NCBI GenBank assembly: GCA_001179505.1
Contig: CDMY01000710.1
Span: 1 to 28,421 of the forward strand
Length of the DNA stretch: 28,421 nt
Reading direction: 5' to 3'
From: Vitrella brassicaformis CCMP3155
Taxonomy: Eukaryota > Protista > Chromerida
Shown: positions 3,559 through 27,488 of the stretch, one piece after another
Numbering within the stretch: position 1 is the stretch's first letter
Layout: each line of letters starts with the position of its first letter
Position numbers and translations under genes: made by a program
Notes under the pieces: model-generated
The model's input: the letters and a program-made list of their open reading frames with translations, nothing else
Databases searched by the model: none
What the model was told of the DNA's origin: nothing

Positions 3559-3567
3559 TTATATATA

Positions 3568-4274: not shown

Positions 4275-4360
4275 ATATAATAAATCGCATTTTTTGTTCG
4301 CCACCCCTCTCCCCTTTTCCACCCCCCCTGCTCATCCTGTCCATTCTCATTTAAAAAATA

Positions 4361-4470
4361 AAACCCACATATATATAGGTGGGTTTCATACCCTATCACA
4401 TGGAAACGTACCCTTGACCCCAGGGGACTGAAAGAACCCTTGGGTCAAGGTACGTTTCCATGTATATACA
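4361..4470. repeat. Cluster of inverted repeats at the right end of the AT-rich island
   Basis: aaacccac(4361-68)/gtgggttt(4379-86); acatggaaacgtacccttgaccc(4398-4420)/gggtcaaggtacgtttccatgt(4442-63) with a 1-nt bulge; perfect palindrome tgtatataca (4461-70). Confidence 0.9.
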
Positions 4471-5322
4471 ACACATGAGCTTCTTTTCTGAGTTGTTCGA
4501 CCTTCAAGCTTTCGACGGCGAATCATTCATTGAGTGATTTGAGAAGAATGAGTGAATCATTCATCATTCTTGAATGAGGTGGAGCGAGAGATGAGTGCCC
4601 TGCAGGCTATGGCAGAGGAGGATAGTGGTGAGCAGGTGAACGTAGAGATCGATTGAGGTGTGTTGGTGTGGGATGACTATCTCTGTATGATAAATCTGTG
4701 TTTTTGGACATTCCATCACTCAATCTGTCGATTGCTCGTCGCATTCCATCACTCATTCGCCAGTGAATCACTCCTGGTTGTCTGTCTCGCCCAAGCAACG
4801 CTCAAGCACTTGCTTTGCTCGCGCTCCTCATCCTCGCCGCGCCGGCCGGGTTGCTTTTTTTTCTTTTTTCCGGGCCAAGCTCGACGCCAGGCGAGTCAGG
4901 TGGCCTGCTGGGATGCCCTGGTGACTCAGACGGGCAAGCAGAAGGCGTGTGAATTTGGTCGCTTAAATGGGAAAACGCTTATATGGGAAAAACGCTATAT
5001 GGGACATGAAATTTCCCTCCTCCGTCGGGCTGGCGGGACTCGCTCGCATTCCCGAAACGAAATGCAAAGTCCCCATGCATGCAAAGCCCCAAAGCTCGCA
5101 TGCAAGCCCCCGCAAGGGAACCGAAGGGAATTGCTAGCTTGGCCCCAATTACGGACAAACAAACAAAGGAACACTTTGTTGCGTAAGAGCGTGCCACGCT
5201 CGTGAAACTCGCGAGTCCCGAACCCTGAGCCCTGTCCCATTTATCCTACCCTGACAGTAAACAAAGGAGCATGTAGTGATAAGGCATAGCTCTCTTTTTC
5301 ACTACTTGAACTTAGTCACAGA

Positions 5323-5603
5323 CTAGTATTGTGTCGGCCGCCTTCGGCGGCCGTGGATCCCGAGGAGCTCAACCTGGAGCGGGCAAAGTAATAGGTTGAC
5401 AACGCCACCTCGGCGCACGTCTGTATAGGTTAGGGTCTAGGGTTTAGAGTTTGAATTGCACTGGGCTCCTGAGACACTGTGCCGCACGATTCGAGAAGCA
5501 CACCGCTCGAACCACCGGCCGGCGCTTGACATCGCCATGAAGCGAAAAAGGAAACCCTAAATGTGCACCTTTGGGGTTTCCTGCGTCGTTACCTGTAGTG
5601 GGA
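5323..5603 (-). mobile_element. Non-autonomous Helitron, 281 bp
   Basis: The minus strand reads A|TCCCACTAC...cggccgcc-gaa-ggcggccg-8 nt-CTAG|T. That gives 5' TC, a 3' GC-rich hairpin (5335-5353), CTAG (5323-26), an AT target and no TSD. Confidence 0.8.
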
Positions 5604-5668
5604 TGTATGACGTACTTTTATAAACATACTGTCATATGCACTATATCTGTATACTTGTTTCGTCATAG

Positions 5669-6120
5669 GCCACATACCAAGGGCCTTCTGGGAGACCCCG
5701 TACATTGTCATAAGACACTCGGGAGGCAGACTCTGGGATCTAGGACGTAGGCCTGGTCATATGTACGTGGGTGTGCCTGCGTTTGTGAATGCCTGTGGCT
5801 GTATTTGTGTGTATCCTGCAGATGCTAATTCTTTGGAGGAGACAGATGACAACGGTGTCATAGTCTCTCTGCGAGCACCCTCACAGGCTATAAAGATCAA
5901 CCGGTATGTCAGTGTGTATGGTATCACATCACATGTACACCGATCTGAGCCATCTGCGTTTTCGATGTGCAGCGACACTGGGAAAATTGAGTGGCGTCTT
6001 GGCGGCGAAAGTGCGGACTTTAAGATTATCAACGATCCCCACGGCAGATTCATAGGCCAACACGACATAAGGGCTCCCGGTGGCAATCGGATCACTGTGT
6101 TTGACAATGCTCAAAAAGGT
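5669..6120 (+). pseudogene. Arylsulfotransferase (ASST, PAPS-independent) gene fragment, 3 exons
   Basis: Exons 5669-5746, 5822-5903 and 5973-~6120 with GT-AG introns splice to LWDLGHANSLEETDDNGVIVSLRAPSQAIKINRDTGKIEWRLGG...QHDIR...ITVFDN. This matches the ASST pattern WD-x2-H-x-NS / TG-x3-W-x-LGG / QHD / FDN. N- and C-terminal exons were not found. Confidence 0.75.
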
Positions 6121-6535
6121 GGCGGTCTATGGATAACCGCTCAGTTTGCTGTGATGAGGCGGCCAAGTCGACTACATACTGTACTGTAGAGCCCCTCAAC
6201 AGCGTCATTCAATCAACGACTCAAATCATTCATTCATTCATGCATTCGTTGACCACTCATCCATTCACTCATTCGCTGACCAATCTCGAGTCTGGTTCAA
6301 TGAGGAGAAGTCTGTTTTCGGTGAGAACGTGTCAGGAGATGAAGGGATGGGTCAAACAAGCCAAGAGATGGAGCAAGTGGATCAAGACTGATGAGGGAGA
6401 TGTGCCTTGTCGTCTGTAGTAGGTGAGTCGTGTGTTTGTCTGATTCATTCATCGCATGTGATTGAGTGAATGACTGAACAGAACACGTCATGATGGAAAT
6501 CACGCAATATAATCAATCATTTACGATCATCACAG

Positions 6536-9868: not shown

Positions 9869-10990
9869 ATGGATCATTCCCATGGGAAGAATCAGGTCGT
9901 CATTTCCGCCCATTCCGCTTCATCTGGTCGGAACAAAATCATCGCTCTCGATTTCCTTCTTGTCTTCAACAAACAAGCATCCAAGCCTCCTGCCCTGCCC
10001 CCGAGGTACTTCAACGCTTGCCGTCAAGACCGCAAGGCCGCTCCCTCCGGAGACATCACCCCTCTCTACTTCACCTCTGACAACATCAATGAGGAAAATT
10101 CTTGGACTCGTCGAGCAGTCCTTGCCACTGCCCAGCCCAGAACCGCTTGAACCGGACGCCGCCCTCCGCGATTCATCGGGAAGAGGAGCATGGACATCCG
10201 AGTCCCCCTCGCTGAAGACACGTACTTCACACCACCAGTGGTGTCGACCACCATCTCGAGTGAATCACGAACACATCCGGGCATACGGGATATAGTGCGG
10301 ACGCCCAGCTTGAAGTGGTCATCCCGCTGCCCGGCGCTGAGGCCGAGAGAGTGCTTGAGTGGCGGGACTGGTACCGGAGAACGAAGATCTCCTGCTCGGA
10401 CGGTACATCTCGTTGAAGAGAAGAAGGATGAAGCCGAACGGCGCCCTGGAAGTCCCGAAAATTCCGAAAATGACGTCAGCACAGCACGAGCGTCATCGCA
10501 TGAGCAAACGTATCAGACGAAAACTTCCATCCAAGACCAATGGGCGGGTATAGAAAGTGTGAGTGTACACGTATTACTACACCGTACCCTCACCGTTGCA
10601 AGCGTCGCGTACTCGAACCCTATCTGTACTCTATTCCTCCTCGGGTTTTGGACCAGGAGCATGTACTACTTGAAACCTCCTGGTCCATGTACCAGCTCCA
10701 CTGCAGAAGCGAAAACAGCTCAGCACATGATGTAGTCGGGAAAGTCCGGCGGACCATCAGTCGCATTTTTGAAATTGAAGAGCCCTGGGTTACGCTCTTC
10801 TGGATGGAGACAGATGAGTGATCAGATCACTATTGATGAGCTGGATAAGGTTCTTCGCCAAGAGAATGACGTGCCACTGGCATCATGCAATCCCATGCGT
10901 ATGCAATGTGGAGGTGCTGCGACGGGATCGCTCCTCCTCCTACTGTTGAGGTCCGAATCGCTAATTTTGTCGTGAAATTTCCAACGACCT
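9869..10990 (+). pseudogene. Decayed hypothetical gene; 3' part possibly ubiquitin-like
   Basis: Coding-looking segments lie in shifting frames (VVGKVRRTISRIFEIEEPWVTLFWMETDE* / SDQITIDELDKVLRQE). No intact model could be built. Confidence 0.25.
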
Positions 10991-11014
10991 GTAACGTCTG
11001 CACGCCCTGCGACG

Positions 11015-13801
11015 ATGGACTGGCGGGCTGTTGTGCTGGTTTCCGTGGCCATATCATCATGCCAGCAGACAACATCCGTCCCTATTGCGTCAAAGGACAT
11101 TACCCCGCCACCGCCGCGCAGTACAGATGGTCTCGAGGATGGCGCACCGCCAGCCTATGTGTTCACCGTGTTTGTGTCGGAGGATGAACGCGACGATAAT
11201 GAGGGGCTCAACAAACTCATGTACAAAATAACGGACAAGACGACGGGCGCAAAGATCATCGAGAGTTCGGCGCTGGGCCTAACGGTCAACGGCACGGACT
11301 TAGGGCGAGGAGTGGAGATGCACGAGCTTCCCGCGGAGAAGATAGACGAGACTTACGTAAAGATCGGCAAGCACCGTGTGGTGACGAGTCACGCCATGGA
11401 CTACACGTTCCACGTGCTGCATCTGGAGAGCAACATCACGTGGTACCTCAATGTGCGGCTATTCAACGACGGGGTGGCGTTCAGATACTCGTGGCAAGGG
11501 AGTCAAGAAGACCAGATCAGCAAGGAGGACACGGAATTCGTGATGCCCGGTGCGTGGGTGTGACTACATCTGTCATCTATCTGGGCACGGCATGGTGGAC
11601 ATGGCTCGGTGTATCTGCAGATGGCACCTACGTGTGGTATTTTGAGAGGACAGATGGCCGTCAGCGTTACGAGCTGCAGTCATATGCTGGTAAGTACAAA
11701 AGACAATGCACCCAGGCCTCCATGTGTACCCATTGCGCACATAGGTGAGTGGTTGCATTCCCCCGTGGACCATCTTGCCACACGCGAGAAGCAAATTGGC
11801 CACCTATACGGAGCCCCTCTTCTTTTCGATTTAACTGGCCCTGAGAGCGACGGCTGGAGCAGCAAGGGCATCCAGTACGCCTTGGTCACCGAGGCGGCAC
11901 TCTATGACTTTTCCGGCATGCGTATCGAGGCCCTTCCCGGCCGCATCTTCCGTCCCAACTTCGCCGAGGCGACCTTTCCCGCGCCGCCCCAGAGCAAGGA
12001 TGACGGCCTGATTCACTGTCCCTGGCGCGTCGTCATGCTGGCGTCAAACCTCCACCGCCTGGTCAGCAACGAGATGATCTCGCATCTCAACCCCGGCCCC
12101 TCGGTTGACCTCTTCCGCACAGGAGCACGGGACGATCAAGAACAAGGGCGTGCGCCATCGTGGGTGGTGCCCGGCCGATCTGTGTGGCAATGGTACAACG
12201 CGAAGTGGACGGGCCATCGGTTCGAAGATATCATGCCTGAGGGTGAAAAACGGTATATCGACGCTGCAGCCGAGTTGGGCTTCGAGTACACCACCGTTGA
12301 CTGCTGTTGGCTGCAATGGGGTGCACCCCGCGACGATGATGGGTGTTACACGGCACCAACACGGCACCAACCCCCTTGACACACCATCCATCCTCTGTGT
12401 CCGTGCAGTGATGATGATTTTCTGATCCGCCGGAAAGGTCCGGACGCCCTGTGGCCTGCACCCAGCTGGCCCGACGAGATGCCTGTATTCAACTGGCCCA
12501 ACGCCACCACCAGGCAGGCTTCATACACCCTGCTTGCCGACGTCTGCAAATACGCCAGCGACAAAGGAGTCAAAGTCATTGCATGGAAAGTCAGTGCACT
12601 AATAGTGCCCCGACACGAGAACATGTTTGGCGTCCCTGGTTTTTCAGGACGCACATGACAAAGACAGGATAACTAAGCCGGGCCCCGACAGGAGCTTTGC
12701 CAATCTGCGCAACTTCCTGAGCCGCCTTAAGGCTGTGGGTGCCAGCGGTGTCAAAGTGGACTATGTGCATGGCGAGACTGAGGGTGAATGCGTCGCACAG
12801 GGCTGGGAGGGACACATCGCGGTCGTGTATCATGACGTGACGGATTCTGTCTCTCTTTGTGTGGCTAGATAAGGTTCAATTCGAGACGGCATTGATGGAA
12901 ATGACTGCCGAGCTGAAGCTGGTGGTTAATATCCACGGTTGCCGGAAGCCCAGCGGAGAGTCCAGGAGATATCCAAACCACGTAAACCCACATACACACA
13001 GACACAGAATCGCTCACACACACGCCCGTCTGTGTGTATGGCATGGCAGCTGACGCGTGAGGCTGTGTGGGGTATGGAAATTATGCGTTTCCTCCATGGT
13101 AGGTACTTTAAGAGCCCTTCCAAGCTGGCACTCAAGCCCATCACAGCACGACACAATGCCATACTCCCCTTCACACGATTCGTCATCGGCGGCGCCGACT
13201 ACACACCGATGGCGCTCAGACCGGAAATGAGGGGCAGCACGACCATAGTCAGCCTCACACTCAGCCAGACAGCAACCTTTAATCATGTGAATGGGGGGAT
13301 GGGTGTGTGCAGGTGCATCAGATAGCGTTGCTGGTTCTGTTCGACTCGCCGCTGCAGACCATAGCCGAGGATCCCCATTACCTACTGGACAAGGACAAGC
13401 CCCACGCGGCCGCTCTGGACGTCATCAAGGCCATCCCCGCCACATGGCACACCACGCACCTCCTCCCACCCAGCAGCATCGGCGAGCTCGTCGTCATGGC
13501 ACGCAAGACTAACGACGAGGCGACCGACACGTGGTTCCTCGCAGCAATCAACGGGCGAGACGAACAAGTGACAATCGATGCGATATCTGTGGACTTCCTG
13601 GACAAGATCAAGACATACGAGATGGTTACTTTATCGAGTGTTGATGGTGACGGTGAGGGGATGGTGCAGCGAAGAGAGGCCAGGAAAAAGGGCGAGGAGT
13701 GGCAGCGGCTGGAAGGTGTGAGGCTGCTTCCTGGCGATGGGCTGGTGGTCATGTGGACGGCCGAGGAAAGAAAGAAAGAAGACAAACGGAAAGAACTGTG
13801 A
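11015..13801 (+). CDS. Glycoside hydrolase family 97 (retaining-type, alpha-galactosidase-like), 8 exons, ~772 aa, predicted signal peptide
   Basis: Exons 11015-11549, 11621-11689, 11745-12342 (donor less certain), 12409-12589, 12648-12783, 12869-12981, 13050-13247 and 13313-13801 join in frame (2319 nt). Motifs: VRLFNDGVAFRY, PWRVVM, PGRSVWQW, RYIDAAAELGFEY, GVKVDY, NIHGC..PSG..RRYPN, TREAVWGME, HNAILPFTRF..G.ADYTP, HQIA, IP.TW. Confidence 0.93.
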
Positions 13802-14219
13802 CCGTGTCGTTTGGTCATGACGTGATCTCCCTGCAAACTCGTTTATCTGTGTGGGTGAGGAATGTGCATGATAAACAAGCAGTCTGTTGCGCCGCTGGTC
13901 GTTTCTGGCCGGCTCAGGCAAAGAAATGAGTGGACCTTTAACGATGGATATGCGACAAGAAGATGACAACAATGTTAGCACCCACTGGCTGGCGGGGTGT
14001 CTCGGTGTTGTGTGTATGTGCCTGGTGGGCATGGATGTAGGCCACTAAGAAGAAGCCTGCCAGCGGGCGTGTCGTGCCGAGACATGACAGGCTGACAGAC
14101 AGATGTCATACGAGAGGCGATACACGTGTTGGTTTGGTTCTGTGTGTTGTGTGTGGGGTGAGATCCGCAAGTTTGGTTCAGCACTGGGTGAGATCCGCAA
14201 GTAGCAGAAGGACACAGGT

Positions 14220-15159
14220 TTGCCGCTCCGCAAGCATGTGGTGGGCCACTGGCCCGCGAACAGAGGCGGCGGCGCTGACACTCCACGTCAACGAGCGCAT
14301 GAAGGAGGCCCAGGTCGCCTACAGCAGTGAGGCCTTTCTCGTGAAGGTGGCCGCCGCCCTGGGGCTGATGTCGATGGCGAGAAAGGCGTTGTCGCGGCCA
14401 ACCCCGACAAGGTCGATCGGCTGGTGCGTGCGACACGCGCTTTGGTGCGGCGGAGTGGCCTGCAGAGGCTCCTAGGCAATTGCTCCTAGGGCACTGGACG
14501 TGGTTCATGATGGCGAGGCGGCCGGCCCTGTCATCTTGGCGAGATCGTATGAGTTCTGTCGACGACTCTCGATCGGGGTTTGGCGAGGCTGTGGCCACGG
14601 GTCTGCGGCCCTCTCCTCCTCATCAACATTCGAGCACCGGTGGCGCCCGGCTTTCGACGCATCCGAGGATGGGTTTGGGGTGACGTACGCTACGGCCTCC
14701 CCCGACACTGGGCGTGCGGCTGCAGAGAGGGCCCTTCTCTCCCCCATCCCATCCCCACTCAGCCCCCCCGACCCTCCTCAATCGAATCGAATCGTGCTAG
14801 CGAATCCAAGCCTGAGTATGAGCTGTCCTTCGATTCTGACGGTCGTCCATCTGAGGCCCGGCTGGTGCACGAATATGACACAGGCATCCGCGCATTCACG
14901 ATGCGCAGTTATAGAAGGATGCTTGGGGTTTGGGGGGCGGAGAACGAACGGAACACCCGTTGGAAATCCCTTCTACGTCGAAGCGACAAGCGAGGGGGAA
15001 GAATTGATCACGATGGAGTGGAGAACGGACAGTGCAGCCTTCCGCAGTTTTCCTGGGACGTATCGTACCGTCAAGGCTCCGTGGATCGGCACGCCCGATT
15101 GGCATCCCGTCGCCCTCCTCGACGATGACAACAAAGCCAATGCTCTTCGGCTTCACTGA
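14220..15159 (+). pseudogene. Frame-disrupted hypothetical gene remnant
   Basis: Protein-like segments occur in alternating frames (ESKPEYELSFDSDGRPSEARLVHEY.. / GNPFYVEATSEGEELITMEWRTD..LRLH*). No family recognised. Confidence 0.25.
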
Positions 15160-15289
15160 TTGTCTTACACAAGGGTCGCTATGTCGCCCACGACAGCGGC
15201 TAGCCTCCTGTCTACAACGCTTTTCGAGCGCTGCGGCTCTTCGTGGCGCTGCGATGTCAGGCCGCGATCTCAGGACAGTGTTTCGCTCG

Positions 15290-16290
15290 ACAGTGCGGGT
15301 CTCCGTCGACCCACGGCCTCGAGTATTATCGCCGTCATTGTCGTATACTTTCGTCGATACGAACATATACAATCTCGGTCGCTACGCATAATCGCACGGT
15401 GTCGCTTCAACGAAGTCTCATTCGTCGAATCACGACGGCGGTCGTGTCGTATGCGAGGCAGCGTGCCTTCGACGATTCGCAGCGGCATACGCCGTCGATT
15501 CGATTTCGTGTGTCTCGGCCGCTCCGCATTCCGTGGACGTTTGGCGCGAACGAACCGTCATCCGCCGAAGTACGACAGCGGTCTTTTATCGCATTCGGGG
15601 CACCTGCTCTCGTCAATTCAAGGCTGCGTACGCTGTCGATTCGGTCATACGTGTCTCACTCGTTCTGCGTCTGTTGGCGCTGGGAGACAAACACTCGTCC
15701 GTCCAAGTATGTCAACGCTGACTCAGCGATCGTGTCGTACTCAGCACGTTGTGTCTTCGCCAATTCGCGGCTACTTCGTGTAGTGACTATATTATACGAG
15801 TCTCGGTCGTTCCACGTCTGGGCGCGTCGAGGGGAATGAACTCTCATCCGTCGAATTACGACAGCGGTCTTTATCACATTCAGGGCAGCTTGCTCTCGCC
15901 GGTTCGCAGCGCGGCGCTGTCGCTTCGGGTTTCAGTCTTTCTACGTCTGTGGGCGCTGGGAGAGAACAAACACTCGTCAGTCGAATTACGTCACCGCTCA
16001 TCCAGTGATCGTGTCGTACTCAGGGCAGCATGCGTTGCGCACGCCGTCGAGTCGATTTTGTGTGTCTCGCGTCGATTATATATTTTGTGTGTCTCGGCCG
16101 CTCCGCGTTCCGTGGGCGATAGGGGAGAACGAACTGTCTCCGTCAGATTGCGACAGCGCCGACTTAGTGGTCTTTTGCCGCATTCAGGGCAGCATGCCTT
16201 CGCCGATTCGCGGCTGCTTAGGCTACTGACCTTCACGTCTCGGTCTAGGCGCACGAGGGGGACGATGTCTCCGTTTCGTCCATCTAAAGT
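15290..16290. repeat. Degenerate CpG-rich tandem array, ~7 units of 137-149 bp with alternating A/B types
   Basis: Unit starts at ~15290, 15433, 15573, 15722, 15859, 16002 and 16151. Recurrent motifs are cgacagcggtc, cagggcagc, gtctcggccgctccg and ggagaacgaac. Confidence 0.8.
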
Positions 16291-17418
16291 TGTGCGTCTG
16301 TTACCAATGCGGGGCTGCGACGCCGGCTCGTGAGTGAAGGCATGGGCCGTGTGCCGCTGCGTGTCTTCCGTCGATCGCATTGTTAGTTGCGGTGGGCACA
16401 AAACCGTCGTTCCTCCAATGGTTTGTTCTCGACGCCATGCGAGGCTCGGTCTTTATCGGTGCGAGGTACCGAGGATTATCGAGTAGAGACACGTTAGTCG
16501 ACAACAAAGACGTAACGGCGCAAGGCGACACTTGTCGATTGCGGTCTACGTGCTTCGTATGCGAATGATGGCCTTCGTCATTCACTGTACTGCGAGCTGC
16601 GAGCGCATGTCCTATGCTGTGTGCGTTGTCGACCGAAAGCGGATGCCTATTATCTCGTCGGCGTCGTGGCTGTCTCCGACAAGTCTCGTATTATCGCATC
16701 ACCCGTATCAACGCGACCTCCGTCAGGATCCGCTATTTCGCGAAACTCCGTCTTTGCCATCTATGCGAGGATCTCTTTCGTCGTCGTCGATGGGAAGCTC
16801 TGTCTTTTGTCGACACCTACCTCTCGTCTGTGGCACGAAGTCGGTTAGAGAACGAATTCATGGCGAGGCAAGGCGGCATGTCTCGTACGTTCCTGGCTAC
16901 GCACTGGTCGACTGTAGAGTACGTGCCCGTGCGCGAATGTCTCGTCCTCTATCGATGCAGCCCCGTCCATATCCGGAGCTACGGAGCTATGGGCTCTGTC
17001 GTCGTCGAGTGGAAACGGGGGATTCTCATCAATTCACTGTATGTGCGTGTGCGCCACGTCATCGGCTCAAGGTCGTAGCTGTCCGGCTCAAGGCCGTTGC
17101 GATAAAGAGGGAACGCAGCAATATAGAGACACGTAGCGAAACATACGCACGTTAGGCTTTGGCCTCCACACATATGCCAGACGCTCATGCGTGAGTCAGT
17201 CGAACGGAAGCTGAAGGGGGGAAGGGGGAAGATATAGCGCTGACTCAGCCTACTTCCGTCTACTTCTGCTCACCCAAGCTCGCTTGCATACTTTTCGATT
17301 CACGAATCGCGAGTCATTCATTCACTTAAGTCTGGCCATTTTCGGGTCTGTTTCAATGAGAAGGGGGCTGTATCTCGCGAGAACGTGTTAAAACGAGTCC
17401 TGTGGCCGACGAATTAGG

Positions 17419-20400
17419 CTACTTTGAATGGTCCTCAAACACGCGGAGGACCTTTCGGACACTCTTGCTCACAGGCCGGATGTCAATGCTCAGAATGCCA
17501 CTCGTGTTGTTCCATTTCCATGAGCCGAAAGAAGAGCTGTCGTCGTTGCTCTTGGCTGGCCGCCAATCAAGAGCATGATGAGTAGAATCCCCATCACTTT
17601 GGAGCAGCAAATCCGCACCACTGACACGGACAGTCCGATGAAGAATCACTTCAATGTGAATAGTCTGAGTGGTATCCTTGTGCGCGCTCGTGGAAACATT
17701 TCCGTTTGTGAGGGCATCAATCTCTGGTCCAATTTTGATTTGGCCAAAGCCGCCGTCGGTCAAGCCGCTGAAATCGGAAGACACCTCGGTCCTTCGCCTG
17801 ATCGAAGGAACAAGAGCAACAGCTGACGATGGATGCTTGGCTCTGTGCCTGAATGCTTACAGGCGGTAGACAGGGCGATTCTGCAGATCATAGTGATCCA
17901 CGGTGGCCCCATCGTCGTCAATTACTTCAAAAGACGAGCCAGTATTCAGGGAAGCAAATACCCTCACCGAGAGACTTGCCTCCACCTCTCCGTGCAAAAG
18001 GCGGCCATCGGCGTCTTTGGTACCGTCAGTCACGGGCATGAAAGGTATGATCGCACCGCTTTTCGCGTACGCAGGTAGAGTATACACGCCTTCCGAGTGA
18101 CGAAACAGTGAAACGTTCCGCAGCCACTGGCCGCCGGCAAAATGTGCGTATGGATGATGGTACGAGTGCCAGTCGCCTTCAGGCAGGTAGACATCAGTGT
18201 GGGTCTGGCCGTGTTGGGCTGCAAAAGCGACCATAATTTGATCACCAAGCATCTTTTGGCTTCCCATGGTGCGCACAGTGGCGTCAGAAGGGAAGTAATA
18301 CCTGCTCGTAACAAGCAAATGCACGAGAAATGGCAGGATGCCTTTTGCTTGGCGAGCCCCGACTGTCTCACCACAAGGGCGCAATGACTGGCAGTCCGTA
18401 CTGGAATGCGCGATAGGCCAGCGCATAGTAATACGGAATCAACTCATATCTCTGACGAACGTTGAACCTGGATCCACATGGACACGGATGACACTACAGT
18501 CTCTTGGCCCCCCCCCCCCCCCCCCCCCCCCNNNNNNNNNNNNNNNNNNNNNNNNNNNNNNNNNNNNNNNNNNNNNNNNNNNNNNNNNNNNNNNNNNNNN
18601 NNNNNNNNNNNNNNNNNNNNNNNNNNNNNNNNNNNNNNNNNNNNNNNNNNNNNNNNNNNNNNNNNNNNNNNNNNNNNNNNNNNNNNNNNNNNNNNNNNNN
18701 NNNNNNNNNNNNNNNNNNNNNNNNNNNNNNNNNNNNNNNNNNNNNNNNNNNNNNNNNNNNNNNNNNNNNNNNNNNNNNNNNNNNNNNNNNNNNNNNNNNN
18801 NNNNNNNNNNNNNNNNNNNNNNNNNNNNNNNCCCCCCCCCCCCCTCCCCTTCCCAGCACGTACGCACCTGTTGCTGTTGAGCCATCCGATCTCTGCCGGA
18901 GATATCCTATAAACACAGTGCTTATCCTCACTCCCAGGCGGGCACTTGTTCATCTTGAGGTTTTCTGTGTGTACGCGGAGAGGGACGTCAAACCATGCGC
19001 TGGCCGCCAACCATCTGGTATACATTCCGTCCTCTGCTGGATGGGCGCCGTTGGCTATCGCTGTGTCGTTGGGAAAGAACCATCGCTTGAATCCTCCGGT
19101 GTCCGTACCGTAATAGTCGATCCCAACAGTCACCTGTGGCGCATCAGCAATTTATCTGCGCTGAGGCTTTGTCGCTTCCTGTATTGGCATGCGATTCACC
19201 ATATTCATCTGCGACTGCTGATGCATGGCAAGGGCATCAAGTCTGCTTGCAATGTCTCCACTCCACACTGACGCTCCGAACCGCTGAATGCCGAGTGTTC
19301 CGGCTCGAGACAACATGAAAGGTCGTTGGGCTGTCTGGTTGGCACGATGGTTGCGGACGTAGCCGTCGTAGATGCTTCGGAGCCACAAGAAATTGTAGCT
19401 GATTCATACAAGTGCAAAGAAAGGCATGTGTGCAACGTGCTCGTTGGTGTTGTTTCGTTCCTCATTTACAGGTTATGCACATCTGCATGACGCTTCCCAG
19501 AGAGCCCCGCCCCGTTGTAACAAGCATCCTCGTCATAGCGTGAGGGCTCGCCCAGGTCGGTCCAATGAGCAGCGATCCCATTGCTAATGATATTGGGGTA
19601 TCGACGGTGGTCGTGTACCCACGCAGCTCCCTCCGCATGTGTCCAATCAACCATTGAGCCCTCACCCCACCAACTAAAACAAAGAACGCAGATGCGACTG
19701 TGCGCGGCTTTGTCGTGCATTTACGCACTCGTGCAAAGCGATCGGTGCTCGGGGATTGCCACACTCGGTGGCGAGATAGCCCTTGCCCTTCATCTCATGA
19801 TAAGTGAGCGTCTCGGATGCCATGTAGGACTCCTCGATTGCCATGAGAGCCAGGTGGTCACTATGATATGCAGCAATGTGCCTCTGAGGGTCGGGAAAGT
19901 GCCGTGTGTCCCAGTCAAGTGTGCCCATGGAGGACTTGATGCTGGGACGGATGCCCCCGAACCAATATAAATCTGATACCCAGCAGCAAAAAGGACACAC
20001 CGGCAAGTACCCGTGCGTGTGTCCTTCTTCTTCATCACCAAGGACAATCCCATCAATGGGTATTTTTGCGTCCCGTACGCTTTTTACTGCAGAGTCAGTC
20101 TCGTCCCAGGACTCGAAACCGTACTCACTCAGCCACTGACCAATCACACACTCCCCCAGTCATGTCGCAATTTAGCTGACTTCTTACCAGCCCAAACGCC
20201 TTCCTGGGAGGCACAGGAGGCGTGCCGACCAGCTGCATGTACCGAGATCGCACGGTTAGTGGGTCCTCTCCCATAATGACGAACAAACGATGCGGCACAT
20301 CCGCAGGGGTGTTTGGAGTGGCGATCGTCCACCATTCTGATGATGAAAAATCCCAAGACCTAAGCATAGCAAGGAGGCGCCGCGTTCACGCGGATTGATT

Positions 20401-21429
20401 GGAATTTGCCAAACTTTCTTACTGTTTGTATGTGTTGTCGAAGAGAAGACCCATGGAGGTTTGTCGTCCCTCCTTGGGAAGAGCCAACATGAAGGGAAAC
20501 TGGAGCACACCTCCTTTGCCTACATCAAACGCACGCATCACAGCGCCCTTGTCGAGGTGTCGTCTCACTACAGCGTGTGAGCTACCCGTGGTCTCTTTCG
20601 TCGTTTGTCCTTCTGTGTCGGGGTTGTGCCTAAACTCGTTGCCAAAGCTACTTCCCGATCCGAACCTCCCAAATGTGAGCCAGTCGCCGTTCACCTCGCC
20701 CGCCAACTGAAACTGCTGTCCTACTCCAAATGCATGGCTGAAGGATTGGCTCTGCACACTAAGGATCTTCAGCCCGCCGTCCTCTGTCCACCCATCCACG
20801 CAAAACCTGGTGAGAGCTTTGCCATTGTGATACACGTCCAAGCACCCCCCCTTCTCGTGCACCACTGCGATGCCCCTGCCTTGTATCGAGTGCTCCTCCG
20901 TGCTGACCGAACAGTCATCAACGAGCGAGGTGGGGTTGTTGTCGAAGACCATGTGGCTGCTTTTGATGGCCACATCGGCCGAGGGCCCCGTGCCTTTGCC
21001 GAACTCGATGTGTGTCGCGTTGGTATCGAGGATGGACACCAGTGCATAACCCTGTACCTCTTGCACTTTGAAGAGGAACTTGACGCGACAGCTGCCATGA
21101 AGTGCGGCGATAGATGGCTGTTCGACTGTAAGCAGCTCTATTTGCAGTGTATTTGATGTGAGCCCTGCCTTCTCATTCTCCGTAGTCGAAATATGTGGCT
21201 CACCATCCCCCACAGTGTCCAGGAAGCGACCATCCCCCAAAGTGTCCAGGAAGCGGGCTTTGAGCTCTGGAAGAGGAGGCGTTTCGAAAGACTCGCGAAG
21301 ACGTTTGGGCACATCTGGTTCAGGCACAAATAACGAAATTCAATTGCACTGATCTCTGGGCTGGTTACCTGCACCACATGACCATGTCATGAAGAGCCCT
21401 AAATAGATGGCCGGCCCACTTGCGAACAT
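17419..21429 (-). CDS. Glycoside hydrolase family 31, bacterial CtsZ/Agd31B-like alpha-glucosidase or transglucosylase; multi-exon, predicted signal peptide
   Basis: Exon 1 (21429-21369) encodes MFASGPAIYLGLFMTWSCGA. Motifs: YMQLVGTPPVPPRKAFG, IPIDGIVLD, YWFGG...MGTLDWD...FPDP, WTDLGEP (19564-19544, nucleophile), RPFMLSRAG..GIQRFG..VWSGD (acid/base D at ~19255), DYYGTDTGGF, RYELIPYYY, MLGDQIMVA, VYLPEGDW, LPAYAKSGAIIP. Stop at 17419. Confidence 0.92.
18532..18831. other. Assembly gap (300 N) flanked by poly-C, inside a GH31 intron
   Basis: Splicing AACAG|gtgcgt...gatccag|GTTCAAC across the gap gives in-frame NRFNVRQRYELIPY, so no coding sequence need be missing. Confidence 0.9.
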
Positions 21430-21542
21430 CTGCGGATGCGGCCGATTTTTGTAGTACGGCCAGGTATATCTGACCTGGTCCCCTCCCAGGTGGCCGTAGG
21501 TATTGCCGATGACGAGGTGGGCGGCGGCTAAGAAATGTACAT

Positions 21543-21966
21543 CTCGATGGGCCTCGCCGCGAACGCGGCTCGACGAATGGTTACGAGGGGGGAGGGGCCC
21601 CCGAGTAATGGGAGGCGATCGGGAAGGGACACCAGGCAAATTTTCGCACCAAAGTGGAATATACACGATTATGATCGCGATTGGCCACGGGCTCAGGTTT
21701 AGGGTAGAACGTGAAAGGGAGGATGCAGGAGACACAGCGATTTGACTGTACTTTGCAAGGATCCGGGGAGAGCGGATGAGGAGGACTCAGTCATTAGCGG
21801 TAGGATTGGTCCAGAAGCCGAGAATCTACTGTTTTTGATGGGTGATTGCAGTGAAGGCACACCCTGTGAAGTCAGATGTTTGTGCGGACCATGCAATGTC
21901 GCCCCCTCCCCCTTGAACGGGGGAGGGGGCTTCAAAAGACAAGCTTCAATGGGTCAATGTCATAGG
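21543..21966 (-). repeat. Dispersed repeat, copy B, directly upstream of the GH31 start
   Basis: Inverted homolog of 8340-9286 lacking ~520 bp of its middle. Contains the perfect hairpin gccccctccccc-ttgaac-gggggagggggc (21901-21930). Confidence 0.85.
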
Positions 21967-22480
21967 TAGGAGACAATATGGCAGTTGCACACTGGCACAA
22001 ATTGCAGTTGGAAAGCCGCCTGAAGACTCGTTGTGCTTGGGGGAGGGGAAGACAGACAAAGTGGGGCCTTGCACGCGCGAGTACATGCCAGAAAGCATGA
22101 ATTCACCTCATGCTTACTCCTCGATCCAAACTTCCGTGGTGTTAGAGGAAAAAAAAAGTTTGTAAACCCTGATGGCGCTCGCGTCTCTACTCCGTTGCTT
22201 CTCTGTCAGTGTATGAGTACGATACAGACTCTACACCAGATCTCGCCCTTTCTTCCGTGAATGCCATCGTTTTGGTGACCCTGATGGCCTGAGAAATTTC
22301 ATTTGGAGAAACGGTCCTGAGGTAAGTGGTTCATGACCTTCAGGTTGGTGAGGTACTGCGTGTCTTTTCATGTCCAGAGAAACGGCATCACAACTGAGCC
22401 AGGGATGAAGGCATCTGTCAAGCGGTGAGGGCACCAGGCGTAAAATGACGCCGGAACCACTCGCGTTGTTCTCGGATTGC

Positions 22481-22707
22481 ACACCCATCCACAGGCACAC
22501 GCGTACCCTTCTTGTCGCTCACCTATGTATGTATGGATGTGCGCATGTGTCTGCCGCAGAGATGCCTGGCTGTAGAATGGTCCTTCCCAGCCACGTAGCC
22601 AACCCACATGCCTACACACCCACACGCACATATGAACTCTTCTTGTCGCTCGTCTACGTATGCATGCATATGTTTGCATACACAGAGATGCCTGACTGCA
22701 GACTGGT
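22481..22707 (+). repeat. Diverged tandem duplication, 131-bp period
   Basis: cttcttgtcgctc at 22508 and 22639, each followed by cagagatgcctg.ctg.aga.tggt. Confidence 0.8.
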
Positions 22708-23820
22708 TTTTCTCGGGGCACCACTTGTAATGCAGCAAAAGACACAGCAGCAGGCAGAGGCAAGAGAAAGACATGCATCCATGGCGAGGCAGCAGCAGAG
22801 CAGAACAACCAGACATCTCTATTGTGTACTGCTGCAAGAATGTCATGGTTGACGGGGAAAAGTTAAGTTCATGTCTGTCTGTCTGTTCAGTATGTTGATT
22901 TGTCAGACGTTGATGCTTAGCACGATTGAAGTCCAAAATAAGAGTATACTCAGCTCGCATCGGGCAGTCGGTCGAGCACATACAGATTTGATTCGTATGC
23001 GGGGGACGTCAGTATTGGTTGATAGGTAGGGAGAAGGGAGGAAATAGAGAAAGGAATAGGGTGTATGATGGTTCGCGTGGTGTATGACTTGTGTGCACAG
23101 GATGGCTTGACTTGTGTGTAGAGGAAGGGGAATGGAGGTCTTGTTGGCGAGATGAGAAGCCTCGTTCTTTGCGATCGCGGCAGCGATACGGTGGAATCTT
23201 TTCCCCAGCCGCAGTTGCGCTACCACCTGGCGTTCCTTCATCGTTTTGTCGAGTGCTGGCTAATCCAAGAAGCTCAATCAGCTGGACCAGGACTATGCGG
23301 CTGAAGGTTTCAATTCCTGAACTTTGTACTGTTCATCGTTGTATCATACCTGGAGTTCGTGGTCGCTACTGATGTGGAAGAGAACTGGTATGGCATAGAT
23401 ATAGTTGCATGGACTCAGCCGGCCCCACGCCCCCCGACGACCAGAGGGGGGTGTGGCAGCCGGCTGGTTGCTGCCGTACGACCGTGCGGTGCTTTCATTC
23501 CCCTTCTCCTTCTCGTCTGGCTCACATTCAGATGGACACAACAGAGCTGTGTCAGTCTGTCATTTTCGTGCACATGTATGCCTTGCTTTTTGTCTCGTAC
23601 AATGCGTCTGTTTTTACCGTCTGCGTGGCGCAGTGTATCTGCTTTTTATGTTGTACTCTGGCCTTTTTCCAGGATGTGTGGCGGCCGTTTTGTACACAAG
23701 AAGCGACTGAACCGAATCAGTGATCCCGGCCGGCTGCGTCTCATCTCTCTCCCGTTCTTTGATTGGGAGGGGGTTTCGTCAGCGACCCATAGTTGCCCCT
23801 TGGGGTCGCCCATAGTCGAC

Positions 23821-23892
23821 CTAGTGGAGGCACTCAAAGAAACACCCATAACTCCACTCATGCAGCACTGCACGTGTGAGTGCCTCCACTAG
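23821..23892. repeat. Perfect 16-bp inverted repeat with 40-bp spacer (MITE-like)
   Basis: ctagtggaggcactca (23821-36) / tgagtgcctccactag (23877-92). Confidence 0.9.
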
Positions 23893-23924
23893 ACAAAACC
23901 CTCCAGAAGCCCTTTACTGGTCAC

Positions 23925-24117
23925 GCAGAGGCTAGCCCTGTGGCTGCAGGGATGGCCCTCAGTTGCAAGGCTGGCCTTACACGTGCAGGGCTGGCCTTAC
24001 ACGTGTAGGGCTGGCCTTCTAACCGCAGGGCTGGGTCATTGAGTGAAAAGCTGAATGTCTCACTGCAGGGCTGGCCCCACAGGCAGACATGCCAGCTTTC
24101 CGGCCGCAGGGCCAGCT
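23925..24117 (+). repeat. 20-bp-period minisatellite with a gcagggctggcc core
   Basis: Core variants start at 23925, 23946, 23965, 23985, 24005, 24025, 24065 and 24106. Confidence 0.85.
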
Positions 24118-24598
24118 TTGGCGCACAAGTCGCTTGTATTGCATCAACCGGACGCCTGTGTTGACAGGGCAGTCCACCTCGTGCTTCAGCGGACTATTGA
24201 CGAAAGGGAGCAGACGAGGGAGGTCCGCCGCGAAGTGACCAGCGGGACTCTCGCCGATGCATCATCAGCAAGATCTCGCATGCACCTCGCCGAAACGTGG
24301 ACACGCTGTCGGGGAAGCTCACAGGCGTGGAGGAAAGAAGCGAGGCTCAGAAGGAACGCCATAAGTGGATATCCTCCTATCAGATGCAGATATGTTTCTA
24401 GAGCAGCTGTGATACTTATAGCATTCACACGTCTATGAAGTCAAAGCTACGAGACCCTAAAGTCCCCGGCCATCGTGAGCGCGGTGAATGACTCCCTGGC
24501 CAACAACAAGGTTGTTCCGTTTTTCGGTGTGAAATAAACGCACAACTGACAACAAGAAGAATCATAAGCCATACGAGAAAATCTCTTGCCACCTTTCT

Positions 24599-27488
24599 AT
24601 GCGCTTCCCTCACATGCATGTGTGGTTTGTTATCGTTTCGAGCGTTCCGATTTGCCATTCACTCCGAAAGACCACCAATGAGACGGCCTTCAGGATTCGG
24701 CCTCCCAGGACTGGCCGCCACCAGCAGCCGTCCTTTTCCGTCGACGTCTTTGTTGACCAAACCGATGGCAACGTCCTAAAGTACAAAGTCAGTGCTGACG
24801 GGCAGGAGATTGTCCGACCTTCGACGCTGGGAATGGTTCTTGAAGGGATCCGTCTTGGAGAAAACGTCGAGATCGAGGCGTTAGACGAGACAGAGGTCAA
24901 TGATGTCATCGAGACGCGGGGCGGCAAGCACTCCAGAGCAAAAAATAACTTCGGTGGGCGAAGAAAAAGAACAAGGGGTGCAAACATTCGTTGTCGTTTG
25001 TGCCATACTGGTGTGGTCAGTCGAAGCTGTATACAAGATTCGTCAAGTCGGATCGGATTTCAAGGTATTTCAGTGAAATTGTGCCATTTCTGCCATTTGG
25101 GGCTGTGTCTTCTCTGCAAGTGGCATTTGGACGTCCGCGTCTTTTCTGATGGAGTCGCAATCCGCTATCGGGTCCCTGGAGCTGAGAACGGCACCTTTAC
25201 CGAAACCAAGGTGTTGGGCGAGCTGACTGAGTTTTCTCTCACGTTAGGCGACGATGATGTCACCTGGACCTTCTCACGGCCCAACAATCCGAAGAGTGAA
25301 CTTGGGTCTGTATGAATACATCACATAAGCAACTGCTTACGGAAAGATTGTTCTGCAGAAATTACGAGGGTATATGGGAGGGAGTGAAGTTTCGGGACCT
25401 CCCAACTCGCAACCGGTTCCATGGATCCTTATATGGGTTGCCGGTCGTCCTGTCCGACGCCACGAAGAAGGCGCCATTCCCATATCGGCTGATCACAGAT
25501 GCAGCCCTCTACTCGTACAGGTAAAGGCAACTTGGTCAGAGGCAGCACCGTTGCCTGCTTCACTCGGGTGGTGTGCTCGATTTGCAGTGGAATGAGACTC
25601 AGAGCGGGGGATACTGGAGTTCTGAAGGTCGATTTGGCGGACAAGATGTTCAAGAAAGCACTGCCCTTCAAAACACCCTGGCGTGTTTTAATGCTTGCCG
25701 GCTCTCTTAATGATCTCGTGAACAGCGATCTCGTTCCGAATCTCAATCCACCGCCGGATCTGCAGCTTTTCAACGATACGTCATACATCAAAGCAGGAAG
25801 GAGTGTGTGGCGTTGGCTTAAGCATAACACGGGGACGCCAGAAGAGGAGAGGCACTACATCGACATGGCACAGCAGCTCGGATACGAATATACAACCATA
25901 GGTTAGCAGCAAGCCTGCGATAACTGACATTTCATAGGATGAGGTATACCTATGGCTTCAGATGAAGGATGGGAGAGTCGCAAAGCAGGACATTCTCTCA
26001 TGAGAGATATGGCTGTGCAGGCCGTCTATGATAAGTTTGGCACCCATTACTGGAAAGAAGTAGAGAGACTGATAGAATACGCTGAGGACAAAGGCCTTAA
26101 GGTTAGAGATGACGAAGATACGATACGCAATGGATAGACATGAAGGCAAGCCGTTTGCCCATTTAGGTCTTTCTATGGAAGAACCACGGGCAGGTTGCAG
26201 ACCCTTCGAACGACTATGAAGACCTGCGGACATTTCTCGACAAGGTCAAGCACGTCGGAGCAGCTGGCGTTAAAGGCAAGCAGAAAAGCAGACACGGTGT
26301 TGGATTGTCGTATGGACACTCTCCTGGATACGTATGTAGTTGACTTCTTCAATTCGTATGTCAACTACACACACACCACGAAGGCTCTGTCACACAAGAA
26401 CCACACACCAATTTGACTCTTCAATTTCTTTGCAGTGAAGCAATCGACAAAATAGAACTGCAAGAGAAGATCCTGATTGAGGGAGCGAAGAGGCGTCTGA
26501 TGATCAACTTCCATGGATGCGCCCAACCGTCAGGTCAGGAGCGTACCTATCCCAACGCTGTTACGCGAGAAGGCATTATGGGACTTGGTGGGTGAAAAAA
26601 GAAAGAATGCTCTGCATCACATCATCTCTAGAAAGAAAGAATGCTCTGCATCGCATCACAATCAGAAACGAACAGATTTGGCAGCAATCCCAAACTGATG
26701 TGAGCCAAAATACATACGCACGCGACTCTCTCAAAAGCAATGAACTCTCTTTCATTGGACAGGCCTTCCCATAACGCCGCTCTGCCCTTTACCCGCTTCA
26801 TTGTTGGCCCCGCAGACTACACCCCTCTCTCTCTCGATGAAAAATACAAAGGACCGACCACCACTGTAAACATGCGCACACATGAGGGTGTTAAGGCATG
26901 CTGCACCACTCCTCCATTGCGCTCTGTTAATGTCTCCCCAGGCCCATCAGATAGCGACTCTCATCTGCTTCGACTCGTACCTTCAGACCATTTCTGAGGA
27001 TCCACAAGTCATCATGGAGTCGCCTTTTGTTGACGTTATTAAGAAAATCCCGTCAACGTGGTGAGTGAAAGACACAATCCCACTTTGGTGTCACTCCGCA
27101 TTCTTGGTTCAGGGACGAGACGCGAGTGCTGGAGCCATCGGCGATCGGCGAGCTGGCCGTCATTGTACGTAGGAAAGACGACGAGTGGTTTCTGGGGGTG
27201 CTGAGCGGATCGACAGAGACTCGGGAAGTGAAGATATCCCTCGACTTTCTCGAGGACAAGGAGTACACAGCCACCATCGTCATGACGAAATTGCTAGAAT
27301 CGGATGGCCACGAAAACACCGTTATGGAAGAACATGAGTGGTTCGCCTCGGCTGAAATTGAGGTCAAGCTGTGGGGGGAAGACACGAAGGGAGATGGGTA
27401 CGTTATGATCCTGTCGCCACCCATTGACGACCGACGACGAACGATGAGACAAGAGAGCGTGGCTTCGTGGGTGAGCGACGATCGGTGA
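24599..27488 (+). CDS. Glycoside hydrolase family 97 paralog (retaining-type), 13 exons, ~702 aa, predicted signal peptide
   Basis: Exons 24599-24953, 25021-25064, 25121-25305, 25359-25520, 25588-25901, 25962-26101, 26167-26275, 26340-26355, 26436-26587, 26666-26699, 26763-26865, 26942-27060 and 27113-27488 join in frame (2109 nt). Motifs: VRVFSDGVAIRY, TPWRVLM, GRSVWRW, IDEGW, GVKVDFF, INFHGC..PSG..RTYPN, TREGIMGLE, HNAALPFTRF.VGPADYTP, TWDETRVL, WFLG. Confidence 0.93.

What the first reader, a model, noticed from the sequence alone, without database searches (positions are those of the whole stretch)
11015..27488. Cluster of three intron-containing, bacterial-type, putatively secreted glycosidases (GH97-GH31-GH97) in a eukaryote
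Seen: two GH97 genes and a CtsZ/Agd31B-like GH31 within 16.5 kb, all with signal-peptide-like N-termini, intact catalytic residues and many spliceosomal introns. The GH31 and the second GH97 are divergently oriented. Established: GH97 is a mainly bacterial (Bacteroidota-rich) family, and GH97 and GH31 genes co-occur in bacterial polysaccharide utilisation loci. Inference: an old horizontal acquisition, domesticated and kept clustered as a eukaryotic carbohydrate-scavenging or cell-wall-remodelling module. Caveat: retaining GH97s are typically alpha-galactosidases while this GH31 type acts on alpha-glucans, so a single shared substrate is not assured.
Basis: partly seen in the sequence, partly recalled or inferred. 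Interest (0 to 1): 0.75.

Follow-up and report, generated by a model that had tools for sequence, protein, structure and literature searches.

The report
Three bacterial-origin glycosidase genes in Vitrella
The alga Vitrella brassicaformis has three real, intron-containing genes for sugar-cleaving enzymes of bacterial origin (GH97, GH31, GH97) side by side. They come from two separate old gene transfers followed by duplication inside the alga, and nothing yet shows that the three work as one unit.

Summary
Observation confirmed. The window is a whole 28.4-kb contig of Vitrella brassicaformis CCMP3155. It carries GH97-A (11015-13801, +), an Agd31B-like GH31 (CDS 21429-17419, -) and GH97-B (24599-27488, +).

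The assembly gap (18532-18831) lies inside a GH31 intron. Two transcript contigs splice across it without extra letters, and one DNA contig bridges it with about 10 letters, so no coding sequence is missing.

All 11 GH31 introns have RNA support. The GH97 models rest on homology only. Catalytic residues are intact in all three. In GH97-B the nucleophile sits in a predicted 16-nt micro-exon that has no RNA check.

Horizontal origin is supported. Fifteen Vitrella GH97 loci form one clade and three GH31 paralogs form another. Their other relatives are bacterial by name or gene context, or unnamed metagenome sequences. The GH31 paralogs share 8-10 intron positions.

The "kept as a module" reading is not supported:
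- The two families have different bacterial neighbourhoods; only 1 of 80 bacterial loci of this GH31 type has a GH97 within 10 kb.
- No other GH97 or GH31 locus in the genome repeats the pairing.
- GH97-A has an 84%-identical gene-sized copy elsewhere.
- The GH31/GH97-B spacer holds a repeat and another transcript.

Even so, adjacency is rarer than uniform chance predicts. The scan had already reported bacterial-origin GH97 genes on other Vitrella contigs.

The parts
11015..13801 (+). GH97-A gene (CDS with stop). Exons: 11015-11549, 11621-11689, 11745-12342, 12409-12589, 12648-12783, 12869-12981, 13050-13247, 13313-13801. 772 aa. Signal-like N-terminus MDWRAVVLVSVAISSC. Retaining-type motifs KVDY (Asp499), HG (529-530), Glu548, Glu554.
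   Evidence: Pfam; spliced alignment to paralog P0001; all introns GT-AG, 55-85 nt; motif columns; nucleophile position fixed by 3a24 vs its D-to-G mutant 5e1q. No RNA check.
17419..21429 (-). GH31 gene, CDS with stop (mRNA reaches at least 17400 to about 21568). 12 exons: 21369-21429, 20586-21314, 20423-20519, 20188-20359, 20039-20135, 19729-19972, 19470-19673, 19200-19398, 18868-19133, 18372-18467, 17861-18301, 17419-17797. 994 aa. Catalytic Asp506 (WTDLGE) and Asp583 (WSGD).
   Evidence: Joints in transcript contigs of runs X1 and X2; splice dinucleotides; ORF and 100% match to annotated P0242 and 99.8% to the JGI-sample protein P0243; coordinates; alignment to CjAgd31B 4b9y, E 3.5e-48.
18468..18867 (-). 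GH31 intron 9, which contains the assembly gap (N run 18532-18831) and a poly-C/G run (18499-18531). True length is probably about 80-110 nt.
   Evidence: RNA contigs X1 record 1 and X2 record 3 join the flanking exons with no letters between. DNA contig X3 record 4 has 10 letters between 18498 and 18832. The same intron position occurs in paralog C308.
24599..27488 (+). GH97-B gene (CDS with stop), homology model. Exons: 24599-24953, 25021-25064, 25121-25305, 25347-25520, 25588-25901, 25962-26023, 26087-26101, 26167-26275, 26340-26355, 26436-26587, 26666-26699, 26763-26865, 26942-27060, 27113-27488. 685 aa. Signal-like N-terminus MRFPHMHVWFVIVSSVPICHS followed by a basic Ser/Thr-rich stretch.
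   Evidence: Pfam; spliced alignments to eight guides; assembled in-frame ORF; motif columns. Small exons and all splice sites are without RNA support.
26340..26355 (+). Predicted 16-nt micro-exon of GH97-B encoding (V)DFFNS, which includes the catalytic nucleophile Asp. The upstream intron 26276-26339 has a GC donor; the downstream intron 26356-26435 is GT-AG.
   Evidence: Sequence. Only with this exon is the frame kept through to the stop, and the motif then matches paralogs (VDFFHS, VDFFES). Inference; not checked by RNA.
21540..22130 (.). High-copy dispersed repeat in the spacer between GH31 and GH97-B.
   Evidence: DNA contig depth of 150-400 against 13-24 in the flanks, with many loose ends; a 90%-identical copy on contig C886.
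22266..22873 (+). Separate low-level spliced transcript on the + strand between GH31 and GH97-B (GT-AG introns 22320-22375 and 22424-22558). No recognisable domain.
   Evidence: Joints and contig X1 record 2; Pfam negative.
15400..16200 (.). Degenerate ~140-nt minisatellite in the 3.6-kb convergent spacer between GH97-A and GH31.
   Evidence: the repeat finder families D1-D6 with 130-149 nt spacing; no coding pattern in six frames; Pfam negative.

Best explanation
There are three separately transcribed nuclear genes of Vitrella brassicaformis. Each encodes a retaining exo-glycosidase that enters the secretory pathway.

GH97-A and GH97-B are retaining-type GH97 enzymes, with an Asp nucleophile and Glu acid/base (calcium-dependent in solved GH97s, from memory). 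They belong to a large bacterial retaining subfamily whose characterised members are alpha-galactosidases or beta-L-arabinopyranosidases. The GH31 is an Agd31B/FjDex31A-like alpha-glucan hydrolase or transglucosylase with two catalytic Asp residues.

Each family entered the Vitrella lineage once from bacteria, in two independent transfers. Each gained spliceosomal introns and signal peptides, then multiplied: at least 15 GH97 loci and 3 loci of this GH31 type.

The GH97-GH31-GH97 arrangement on this small, repeat-rich contig was assembled inside the alga by duplication and relocation of single genes. It is not an inherited bacterial locus, and at present there is no evidence that it is a co-regulated unit.

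Shown: gene structures (GH31 by RNA), family membership, catalytic residues, clades, lack of bacterial synteny.
Inferred: substrates, secretion, and that the clustering has no function.
For: - Organism and gene reality: named paralogs and the window's own annotated protein; spliced transcripts.
- Families: Pfam; solved-structure matches.
- Retaining signature D/HG/E/E in both window GH97s and in 106 of 107 aligned relatives.
- One GH97 clade of 15 Vitrella rows (SH-aLRT 100), with GH97-A and GH97-B in its two deepest subclades.
- One GH31 clade of 3 Vitrella rows (SH-aLRT 100). Its nearest relatives whose contigs were checked have bacterial gene order.
- The window GH31 shares 10 of 11 intron positions and phases with the C308 paralog and 8 with C527.
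- 359 bacterial species genomes carry this GH31 type.
- Only 1 of 80 of those loci has a GH97 within 10 kb. The nearest bacterial GH97 contexts lack GH31, apart from one fusion whose GH31 half belongs to another subfamily.
- C710 is the only contig with both families.
- GH97-A has an 84%-identical, 2.86-kb, gene-only copy on C747.
Against: - Under uniform random placement, 16 GH97 and 6 GH31 loci in 72.7 Mb give about a 1% chance of any GH31 lying within 4 kb of a GH97, and about 5e-6 of one being flanked on both sides. Some non-random process is therefore needed.
- A bacterial GH97-GH31 fusion sits in the sister group of the Vitrella GH97 clade. This hints that the two families can cooperate.
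- Expression of the two GH97 genes and co-expression of the three were not tested.
- The trees are quick searches with midpoint roots, and most bacterial rows are unnamed.
Confidence: 0.72

Rival explanations
1. Functional gene cluster. After transfer, selection brought and kept the three glycosidase genes together, so that they are co-regulated (shared chromatin domain) and jointly degrade or remodel one alpha-linked glycan. This would be a eukaryotic analogue of a polysaccharide utilisation locus.
For: The triple adjacency is far rarer than uniform chance. GH97 and GH31 are fused in one bacterial protein related to the Vitrella GH97 clade. All three gene products have signal-like N-termini. 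Earlier notes of this scan list other Vitrella contigs where bacterial-type secreted enzymes sit together; those notes are unchecked.
Against: - No second instance among 14 other GH97 and 5 other GH31 loci.
- No bacterial precedent for this GH31 type next to GH97 (1 of 80 loci).
- The retaining GH97 signature points to galactoside/arabinoside substrates, whereas the GH31 relatives mostly carry CBM20 starch-binding modules.
- The spacers are 3.2-3.6 kb and hold a repeat, a minisatellite and another transcript.
- GH97-A is part of a recent gene-sized duplication.
Confidence: 0.12
2. Common landing site. DNA fragments carrying a GH97 and a GH31, from one donor or from successive events, integrated at the same permissive, repeat-rich locus. 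This contig is the ancestral site from which the dispersed paralogs were later copied. On this reading the clustering is historical rather than selected.
For: GH97-A and GH97-B represent the two deepest branches of the Vitrella GH97 clade, as expected if the first duplication was local. The contig is rich in mobile or foreign-looking DNA: a LINE-like ORF, an AT-rich island, a high-copy repeat and a minisatellite. Six of the 14 contigs that carry GH97 are under 45 kb, which suggests hard-to-assemble regions.
Against: No donor can be named, and the nearest bacterial relatives of the two families come from different, mostly unnamed contigs. The direction of the GH97-A / C747 duplication is unknown. 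The window GH31 is not the earliest branch among its paralogs.
Confidence: 0.12
3. At least GH97-B is not secreted but goes to the complex plastid, or to a compartment on that route. There it would act on alpha-galactosyl lipids or glycans.
For: After the signal-like core, GH97-B has a basic, Ser/Thr-rich, almost acid-free stretch (LRKTTNETAFRIRPPRTGRHQQPS) with Leu at the predicted +1 position. This resembles bipartite plastid leaders (the resemblance is judged from general knowledge).
Against: No targeting predictor was run. GH97-A and the GH31 have acidic residues right after the signal-like region. The stretch is short.
Confidence: 0.1

Closest known systems
Retaining GH97 enzymes: BtGH97b alpha-galactosidase (PDB 3a24, nucleophile mutant 5e1q) and the GH97 of PDB 5xfm
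   Same: Three-domain layout (GH97_N, catalytic barrel, GH97_C). Asp at the position that differs between 3a24 and its mutant 5e1q. His-Gly rather than His-Glu. Two conserved Glu six residues apart.
   Different: Similarity to the solved enzymes is distant (best E 2.8e-27 for the paralog P0001), so substrate cannot be transferred. The genes are eukaryotic, with 7 and 13 introns. GH97-A has long insertions and a charged C-terminal tail.
Cellvibrio japonicus Agd31B alpha-transglucosylase (PDB 4b9y) and Flavobacterium johnsoniae GH31 (PDB 6jr6)
   Same: Best solved matches of the window's GH31 (E 3.5e-48 and 1.3e-44). Both catalytic Asp residues are aligned.
   Different: The N-terminal part (the 306-aa exon) has no Pfam or solved-structure match and very few relatives (18 hits at E<=0.001 in 1.84 billion representatives). 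The CBM20 module found in most bacterial relatives is absent.
Bacterial polysaccharide utilisation loci and the bacterial GH97-GH31 fusion P0124 (MAG GCA_015657915.1)
   Same: GH97 and GH31 are physically linked. The fusion's GH97 half is of the same retaining subfamily and lies in the sister group of the Vitrella clade.
   Different: Its GH31 half is a different subfamily (best E 2e-5 over 78 aa). The alga has no transporter, sensor or operon structure. This GH31 type is next to a GH97 in only 1 of 80 bacterial loci.
Other horizontally acquired glycosidases in eukaryotes (GH97 transcripts in anaerobic gut fungi, bioRxiv 10.1101/487215; an expanded GH97 group in Pyropia, PMC7423979)
   Same: A mostly bacterial glycosidase family present and expanded in a eukaryote.
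   Different: Those lineages do not appear among the listed best relatives of the Vitrella genes, so they are probably separate events. Here two families sit side by side.

Membership tests
Glycoside hydrolase family 97 | N-terminal beta-sandwich, (beta/alpha)8 catalytic domain and C-terminal domain (Pfam PF14508, PF10566, PF14509) | tested here: met
   All three models hit exon pieces of both GH97-A and GH97-B. Single-exon scores for the catalytic domain are partly below cut-off, but they add up in colinear order.
Glycoside hydrolase family 97, retaining subgroup | Asp nucleophile at the BtGH97b position (the residue changed in mutant structure 5e1q), with Gly in place of the inverting enzymes' base Glu after the conserved His | tested here: met
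   GH97-A has KVDY and HGC; GH97-B has KVDF and HGC. For GH97-B the Asp lies in a predicted micro-exon that has no RNA support.
Glycoside hydrolase family 97 | Alpha-galactosidase or other specific activity; calcium dependence | not testable with these tools
   The two conserved Glu residues are present. Activity needs an enzyme assay.
Glycoside hydrolase family 31 (Agd31B-like clade) | GH31 TIM-barrel and C-terminal domains, with a catalytic Asp nucleophile and an Asp acid/base | tested here: met
   PF01055 and PF21365. WTDLGE and WSGD align to the WGDLGE and WTGD motifs of 4b9y. That these are the catalytic Asp residues of Agd31B rests on my memory of the literature.
Horizontally transferred gene of bacterial origin | Nearest relatives bacterial, recipient copies monophyletic, absent from related eukaryotes, integrated in the host genome | tested here: met
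   Clades; bacterial gene contexts; 359 bacterial species genomes with the GH31 type; introns and transcripts. 'Absent from other eukaryotes' rests only on the 120 best hits of each of three searches.
Metabolic gene cluster / PUL-like module | Conserved co-location across paralogs or species | tested here: not met
   No other contig holds both families. Only 1 of 80 bacterial loci pairs this GH31 type with a GH97.
Metabolic gene cluster / PUL-like module | Co-regulation and a shared substrate pathway | not tested
No expression data were obtained for the GH97 genes.
Secreted protein | Cleavable N-terminal signal peptide | tested here: inconclusive
   Hydrophobic cores score KD(11) 2.45 for GH97-A and 2.23 for GH97-B, but only 1.38 for the GH31, and only from the upstream ATG. 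The paralogs have clear signal peptides. No predictor was available.

The most novel reading that the evidence does not exclude
Vitrella has assembled, from independently transferred bacterial genes, a eukaryotic 'glycan utilisation island'. Its members (two retaining GH97s and an Agd31B-like GH31) would be co-regulated and secreted to harvest alpha-linked glycans from its surroundings, such as coral mucus or bacterial exopolymers. This would be one instance of a genome-wide tendency of transferred secreted enzymes to cluster.
Probability: 0.1. Interest if true: 0.7.

Novelty: new member of a known kind. Interest (0 to 1): 0.33.

Why it matters
This adds a documented case of bacterial glycosidases domesticated by an alveolate alga: RNA-verified introns for the GH31, shared intron positions among its paralogs, and one clade per family. 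It also shows that physical clustering of such genes need not reflect an inherited or functional bacterial-style locus.

If the clustering of transferred secreted enzymes in Vitrella proves to be general and co-regulated, it would bear on how eukaryotes build metabolic gene clusters from foreign genes. It would also bear on how a coral-associated phototroph supplements its nutrition.

The predicted 16-nt micro-exon carrying a catalytic residue is a useful warning for gene prediction in this genome.

Tried and rejected
- Single-exon searches of solved structures gave nothing for the largest GH97-A exon or the 306-aa GH31 exon.
- The deep profile-free search with the 306-aa GH31 exon found only 18 relatives. 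It served mainly to reach the paralog P0223/P0241.
- Co-transfer from one bacterial locus was tested and rejected. The GH31 half of fusion protein P0124 does not match the window's GH31. Six nearest bacterial contexts show no GH97-GH31 adjacency. Only 1 of 80 bacterial GH31 loci has a GH97 nearby.
- Recent tandem duplication of GH97-A and GH97-B was rejected: 42% identity, and they fall in different deep subclades.
- Contamination was rejected: introns, transcripts, and the stretch is held by runs from four studies.
- A look-up of the window's annotated GH31 on its contig was not on record.
- An exon-internal 21-mer of GH97-B, searched in JGI metagenome contigs to find a transcript, gave two unrelated chance matches. 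GH97-B expression and its micro-exon therefore remain unverified.
- The C886 GH97 locus gave no usable model and was left out of the tree.
- A first alignment run timed out and was repeated with faster settings.
- The region 13.8-17.4 kb gave no Pfam hit in ten open frames.
- Joined (spliced) protein models were never sent to a database or fold tool. They were used only in local scripts for alignment and trees. Database searches used exon references or stored proteins (P0001, P0241, P0242).

Full report
**What the window is.** The window is the whole of contig C710 (28,421 bases) of a 72.7-Mb, 1064-contig assembly. Paralogs elsewhere in the genome, and the annotated protein of this very contig (P0242, longest contig 28421), are named Vitrella brassicaformis CCMP3155 by NCBI and UniRef. 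The organism is therefore this chromerid alga. Earlier notes of the scan say the same.

**The observation.** Exon-sized open frames hit the three GH97 Pfam domains at 11.0-13.8 kb and again at 24.6-27.5 kb on the + strand. They hit the two GH31 domains at 17.9-20.2 kb on the - strand. The described layout is real.

**The gap, tested first.**
- Two assemblies that behave as transcriptomes (runs X1 and X2) each hold one contig that lies on the GH31 with no mismatches and skips eleven stretches. They hold about half of the words of the stretch searched, which fits spliced RNA.
- All eleven stretches read GT..AG on the - strand.
- One of these introns, 18468-18867, contains the N run 18532-18831. 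The transcript contigs pass from 18467 to 18868 with nothing in between.
- A DNA contig of run X3 has only 10 letters between 18498 and 18832.
- The letters just before the gap (18499-18531) are a poly-C/G run at which reads break.
- The same intron position and phase occur in the paralog on C308.
- The gap is therefore an over-estimated hole in a short intron. The two sides are continuous and in frame in the mRNA.

**Gene models.**
- GH31: 12 exons, CDS 21429 to 17419, 994 aa. The annotated P0242 (933 aa) is 100% identical over its length but starts at a downstream ATG. P0243, a protein from a JGI sample, is 99.8% identical over 643 residues.
- GH97-A: 8 exons, 7 GT-AG introns of 55-85 nt, 772 aa. 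It was built on P0001, a paralog about 72% identical at exon level.
- GH97-B: about 14 exons, 685 aa, from spliced alignments to eight guides. The guides left out the nucleophile motif. Reading the sequence shows a 16-nt exon, 26340-26355, encoding (V)DFFNS between a GC-AG intron and a GT-AG intron. Only with it does the frame run to the stop at 27488, and the motif then matches paralogs.
- Spliced models were used only in local scripts.

**What the enzymes are: GH97.** The solved alpha-galactosidase 3a24 and its mutant 5e1q differ at one aligned residue (KVDF versus KVGF), which marks the nucleophile. GH97-A has KVDY and GH97-B has KVDF at that column. Both have His-Gly where an inverting GH97 aligned has His-Glu, and both keep two Glu residues six apart. 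The same signature is found in 106 of 107 aligned relatives. Both therefore belong to a large retaining subfamily. Similarity to characterised enzymes is distant, so an alpha-galactosidase or beta-L-arabinopyranosidase activity is an inference.

**What the enzymes are: GH31.**
- The best solved matches are Cellvibrio Agd31B (4b9y, E 3.5e-48) and a Flavobacterium GH31 (6jr6).
- Both catalytic Asp motifs are aligned.
- Most bacterial relatives carry a CBM20 starch-binding module, which the Vitrella proteins lack.
- An alpha-glucan hydrolase or transglucosylase is the most likely activity.

**N-termini.** GH97-A and GH97-B have clear hydrophobic signal-like cores. The GH31's is weaker and needs the upstream ATG at 21429, which lies inside the mRNA. 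Paralogs have clear signal peptides. After its signal-like core, GH97-B has a basic Ser/Thr-rich stretch, so plastid-route targeting cannot be excluded.

**Origin: GH97.** In three word-based searches, the only listed best hits marked as eukaryotic are Vitrella's own. The named hits are bacterial and most of the rest are unnamed metagenome sequences. A tree of 15 Vitrella GH97 loci and 92 other sequences puts all Vitrella rows in one clade (SH-aLRT 100) among bacterial sequences. GH97-A and GH97-B fall in its two deepest subclades and share 42% identity.

**Origin: GH31.**
- The GH31 has two paralogs of the same subfamily, on C308 and C527. The three form one clade on a long stem.
- The nearest relatives whose contigs were checked show bacterial gene order.
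- The window gene shares 10 of 11 intron positions and phases with C308 and 8 with C527. The introns therefore predate the duplications, which happened in the alga.
- This GH31 type occurs in 359 bacterial species genomes from many phyla.
- Horizontal acquisition, once per family and long ago, is the best reading.
- Caveats: quick tree searches, midpoint roots, many unnamed rows. Absence from other eukaryotes is judged only from the best 120 hits per search.

**Is the cluster a unit? Evidence against.**
- Six nearest bacterial contexts show no GH97-GH31 adjacency.
- One bacterial protein fuses a retaining GH97 (sister group of the Vitrella clade) to a GH31, but that GH31 belongs to a different subfamily.
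- Among 80 bacterial loci of this GH31 type, only one (a Kribbella) has a GH97 within 10 kb.
- In Vitrella the other 14 GH97 loci and 5 GH31 loci never share a contig.
- GH97-A has an 84%-identical copy on C747 that covers exactly the gene, introns included, and nothing beyond it. Single GH97 genes have evidently moved recently.
- The 3.2-kb divergent spacer holds a high-copy repeat and another spliced transcript. The 3.6-kb convergent spacer holds a minisatellite.

**Is the cluster a unit? Evidence for some non-random cause.** With 16 GH97 and 6 GH31 loci in 72.7 Mb, uniform placement gives about a 1% chance of any GH31 lying within 4 kb of a GH97. It gives about 5e-6 for a GH31 flanked on both sides. 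Candidate causes are an early local duplication of GH97 plus insertion into a permissive, repeat-rich region, or selection. The data do not decide between them. Co-expression was not tested.

**Verdict.** These are real genes of two independently acquired bacterial families, with intact catalytic machinery. The 'module' idea is unsupported but not excluded. This is a new member of a known kind: domesticated bacterial glycosidases in a protist.

Noticed in passing
window 26276-26435: The catalytic nucleophile of GH97-B appears to be encoded by a 16-nt micro-exon (26340-26355), preceded by a GC-AG intron. Standard homology-guided splicing skipped it and produced a motif-less protein.
   Followed up: partly
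window 1-2112 (- strand): A 704-codon open frame running off the contig end has an Endonuclease/Exonuclease/phosphatase domain (E 8.8e-7). It looks like a LINE-type retroelement ORF.
   Followed up: no
window 2026-4470: AT-rich island (27% G+C against about 54%) with a RING-finger open frame (2317-2916). It is already noted by the scan as virus-like (s1-212051).
   Followed up: no
window 5611-6186 (+ strand): Exon-like frame with an arylsulfotransferase (PF14269) match. The family has at least 25 loci in the genome, several of them on contigs that also carry GH97 or GH31 genes, but tens of kb away.
   Followed up: partly
window 21540-22130: High-copy dispersed repeat (DNA contig depth 150-400 against about 13-24), with a 90%-identical copy on contig C886.
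   Followed up: partly
window 22266-22873 (+ strand): Low-level spliced transcript with two GT-AG introns between GH31 and GH97-B. No domain was found, and it is not clear whether it is a separate gene.
   Followed up: partly
window 15400-16200: Degenerate minisatellite of about 140 nt, five to six copies, with no coding pattern.
   Followed up: partly
window 11005-13826 and L038 (C747) 2632-5448: Gene-sized duplication of GH97-A at 84% nucleotide identity, introns included. Its ends lie within 10-25 nt of the start and stop codons, an unusually tight duplication unit.
   Followed up: partly
L025 10001-13990 (MAG GCA_015657915.1): A bacterial 1329-aa protein fuses a retaining GH97 to a GH31. 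It sits in a locus with another GH97, a GH2 and an AraC-type regulator.
   Followed up: partly
window 10728-10876 and L032 (C430) 3415-3565: A 150-nt element, 91% identical, lies just upstream of GH97-A and also at another GH97 locus.
   Followed up: no
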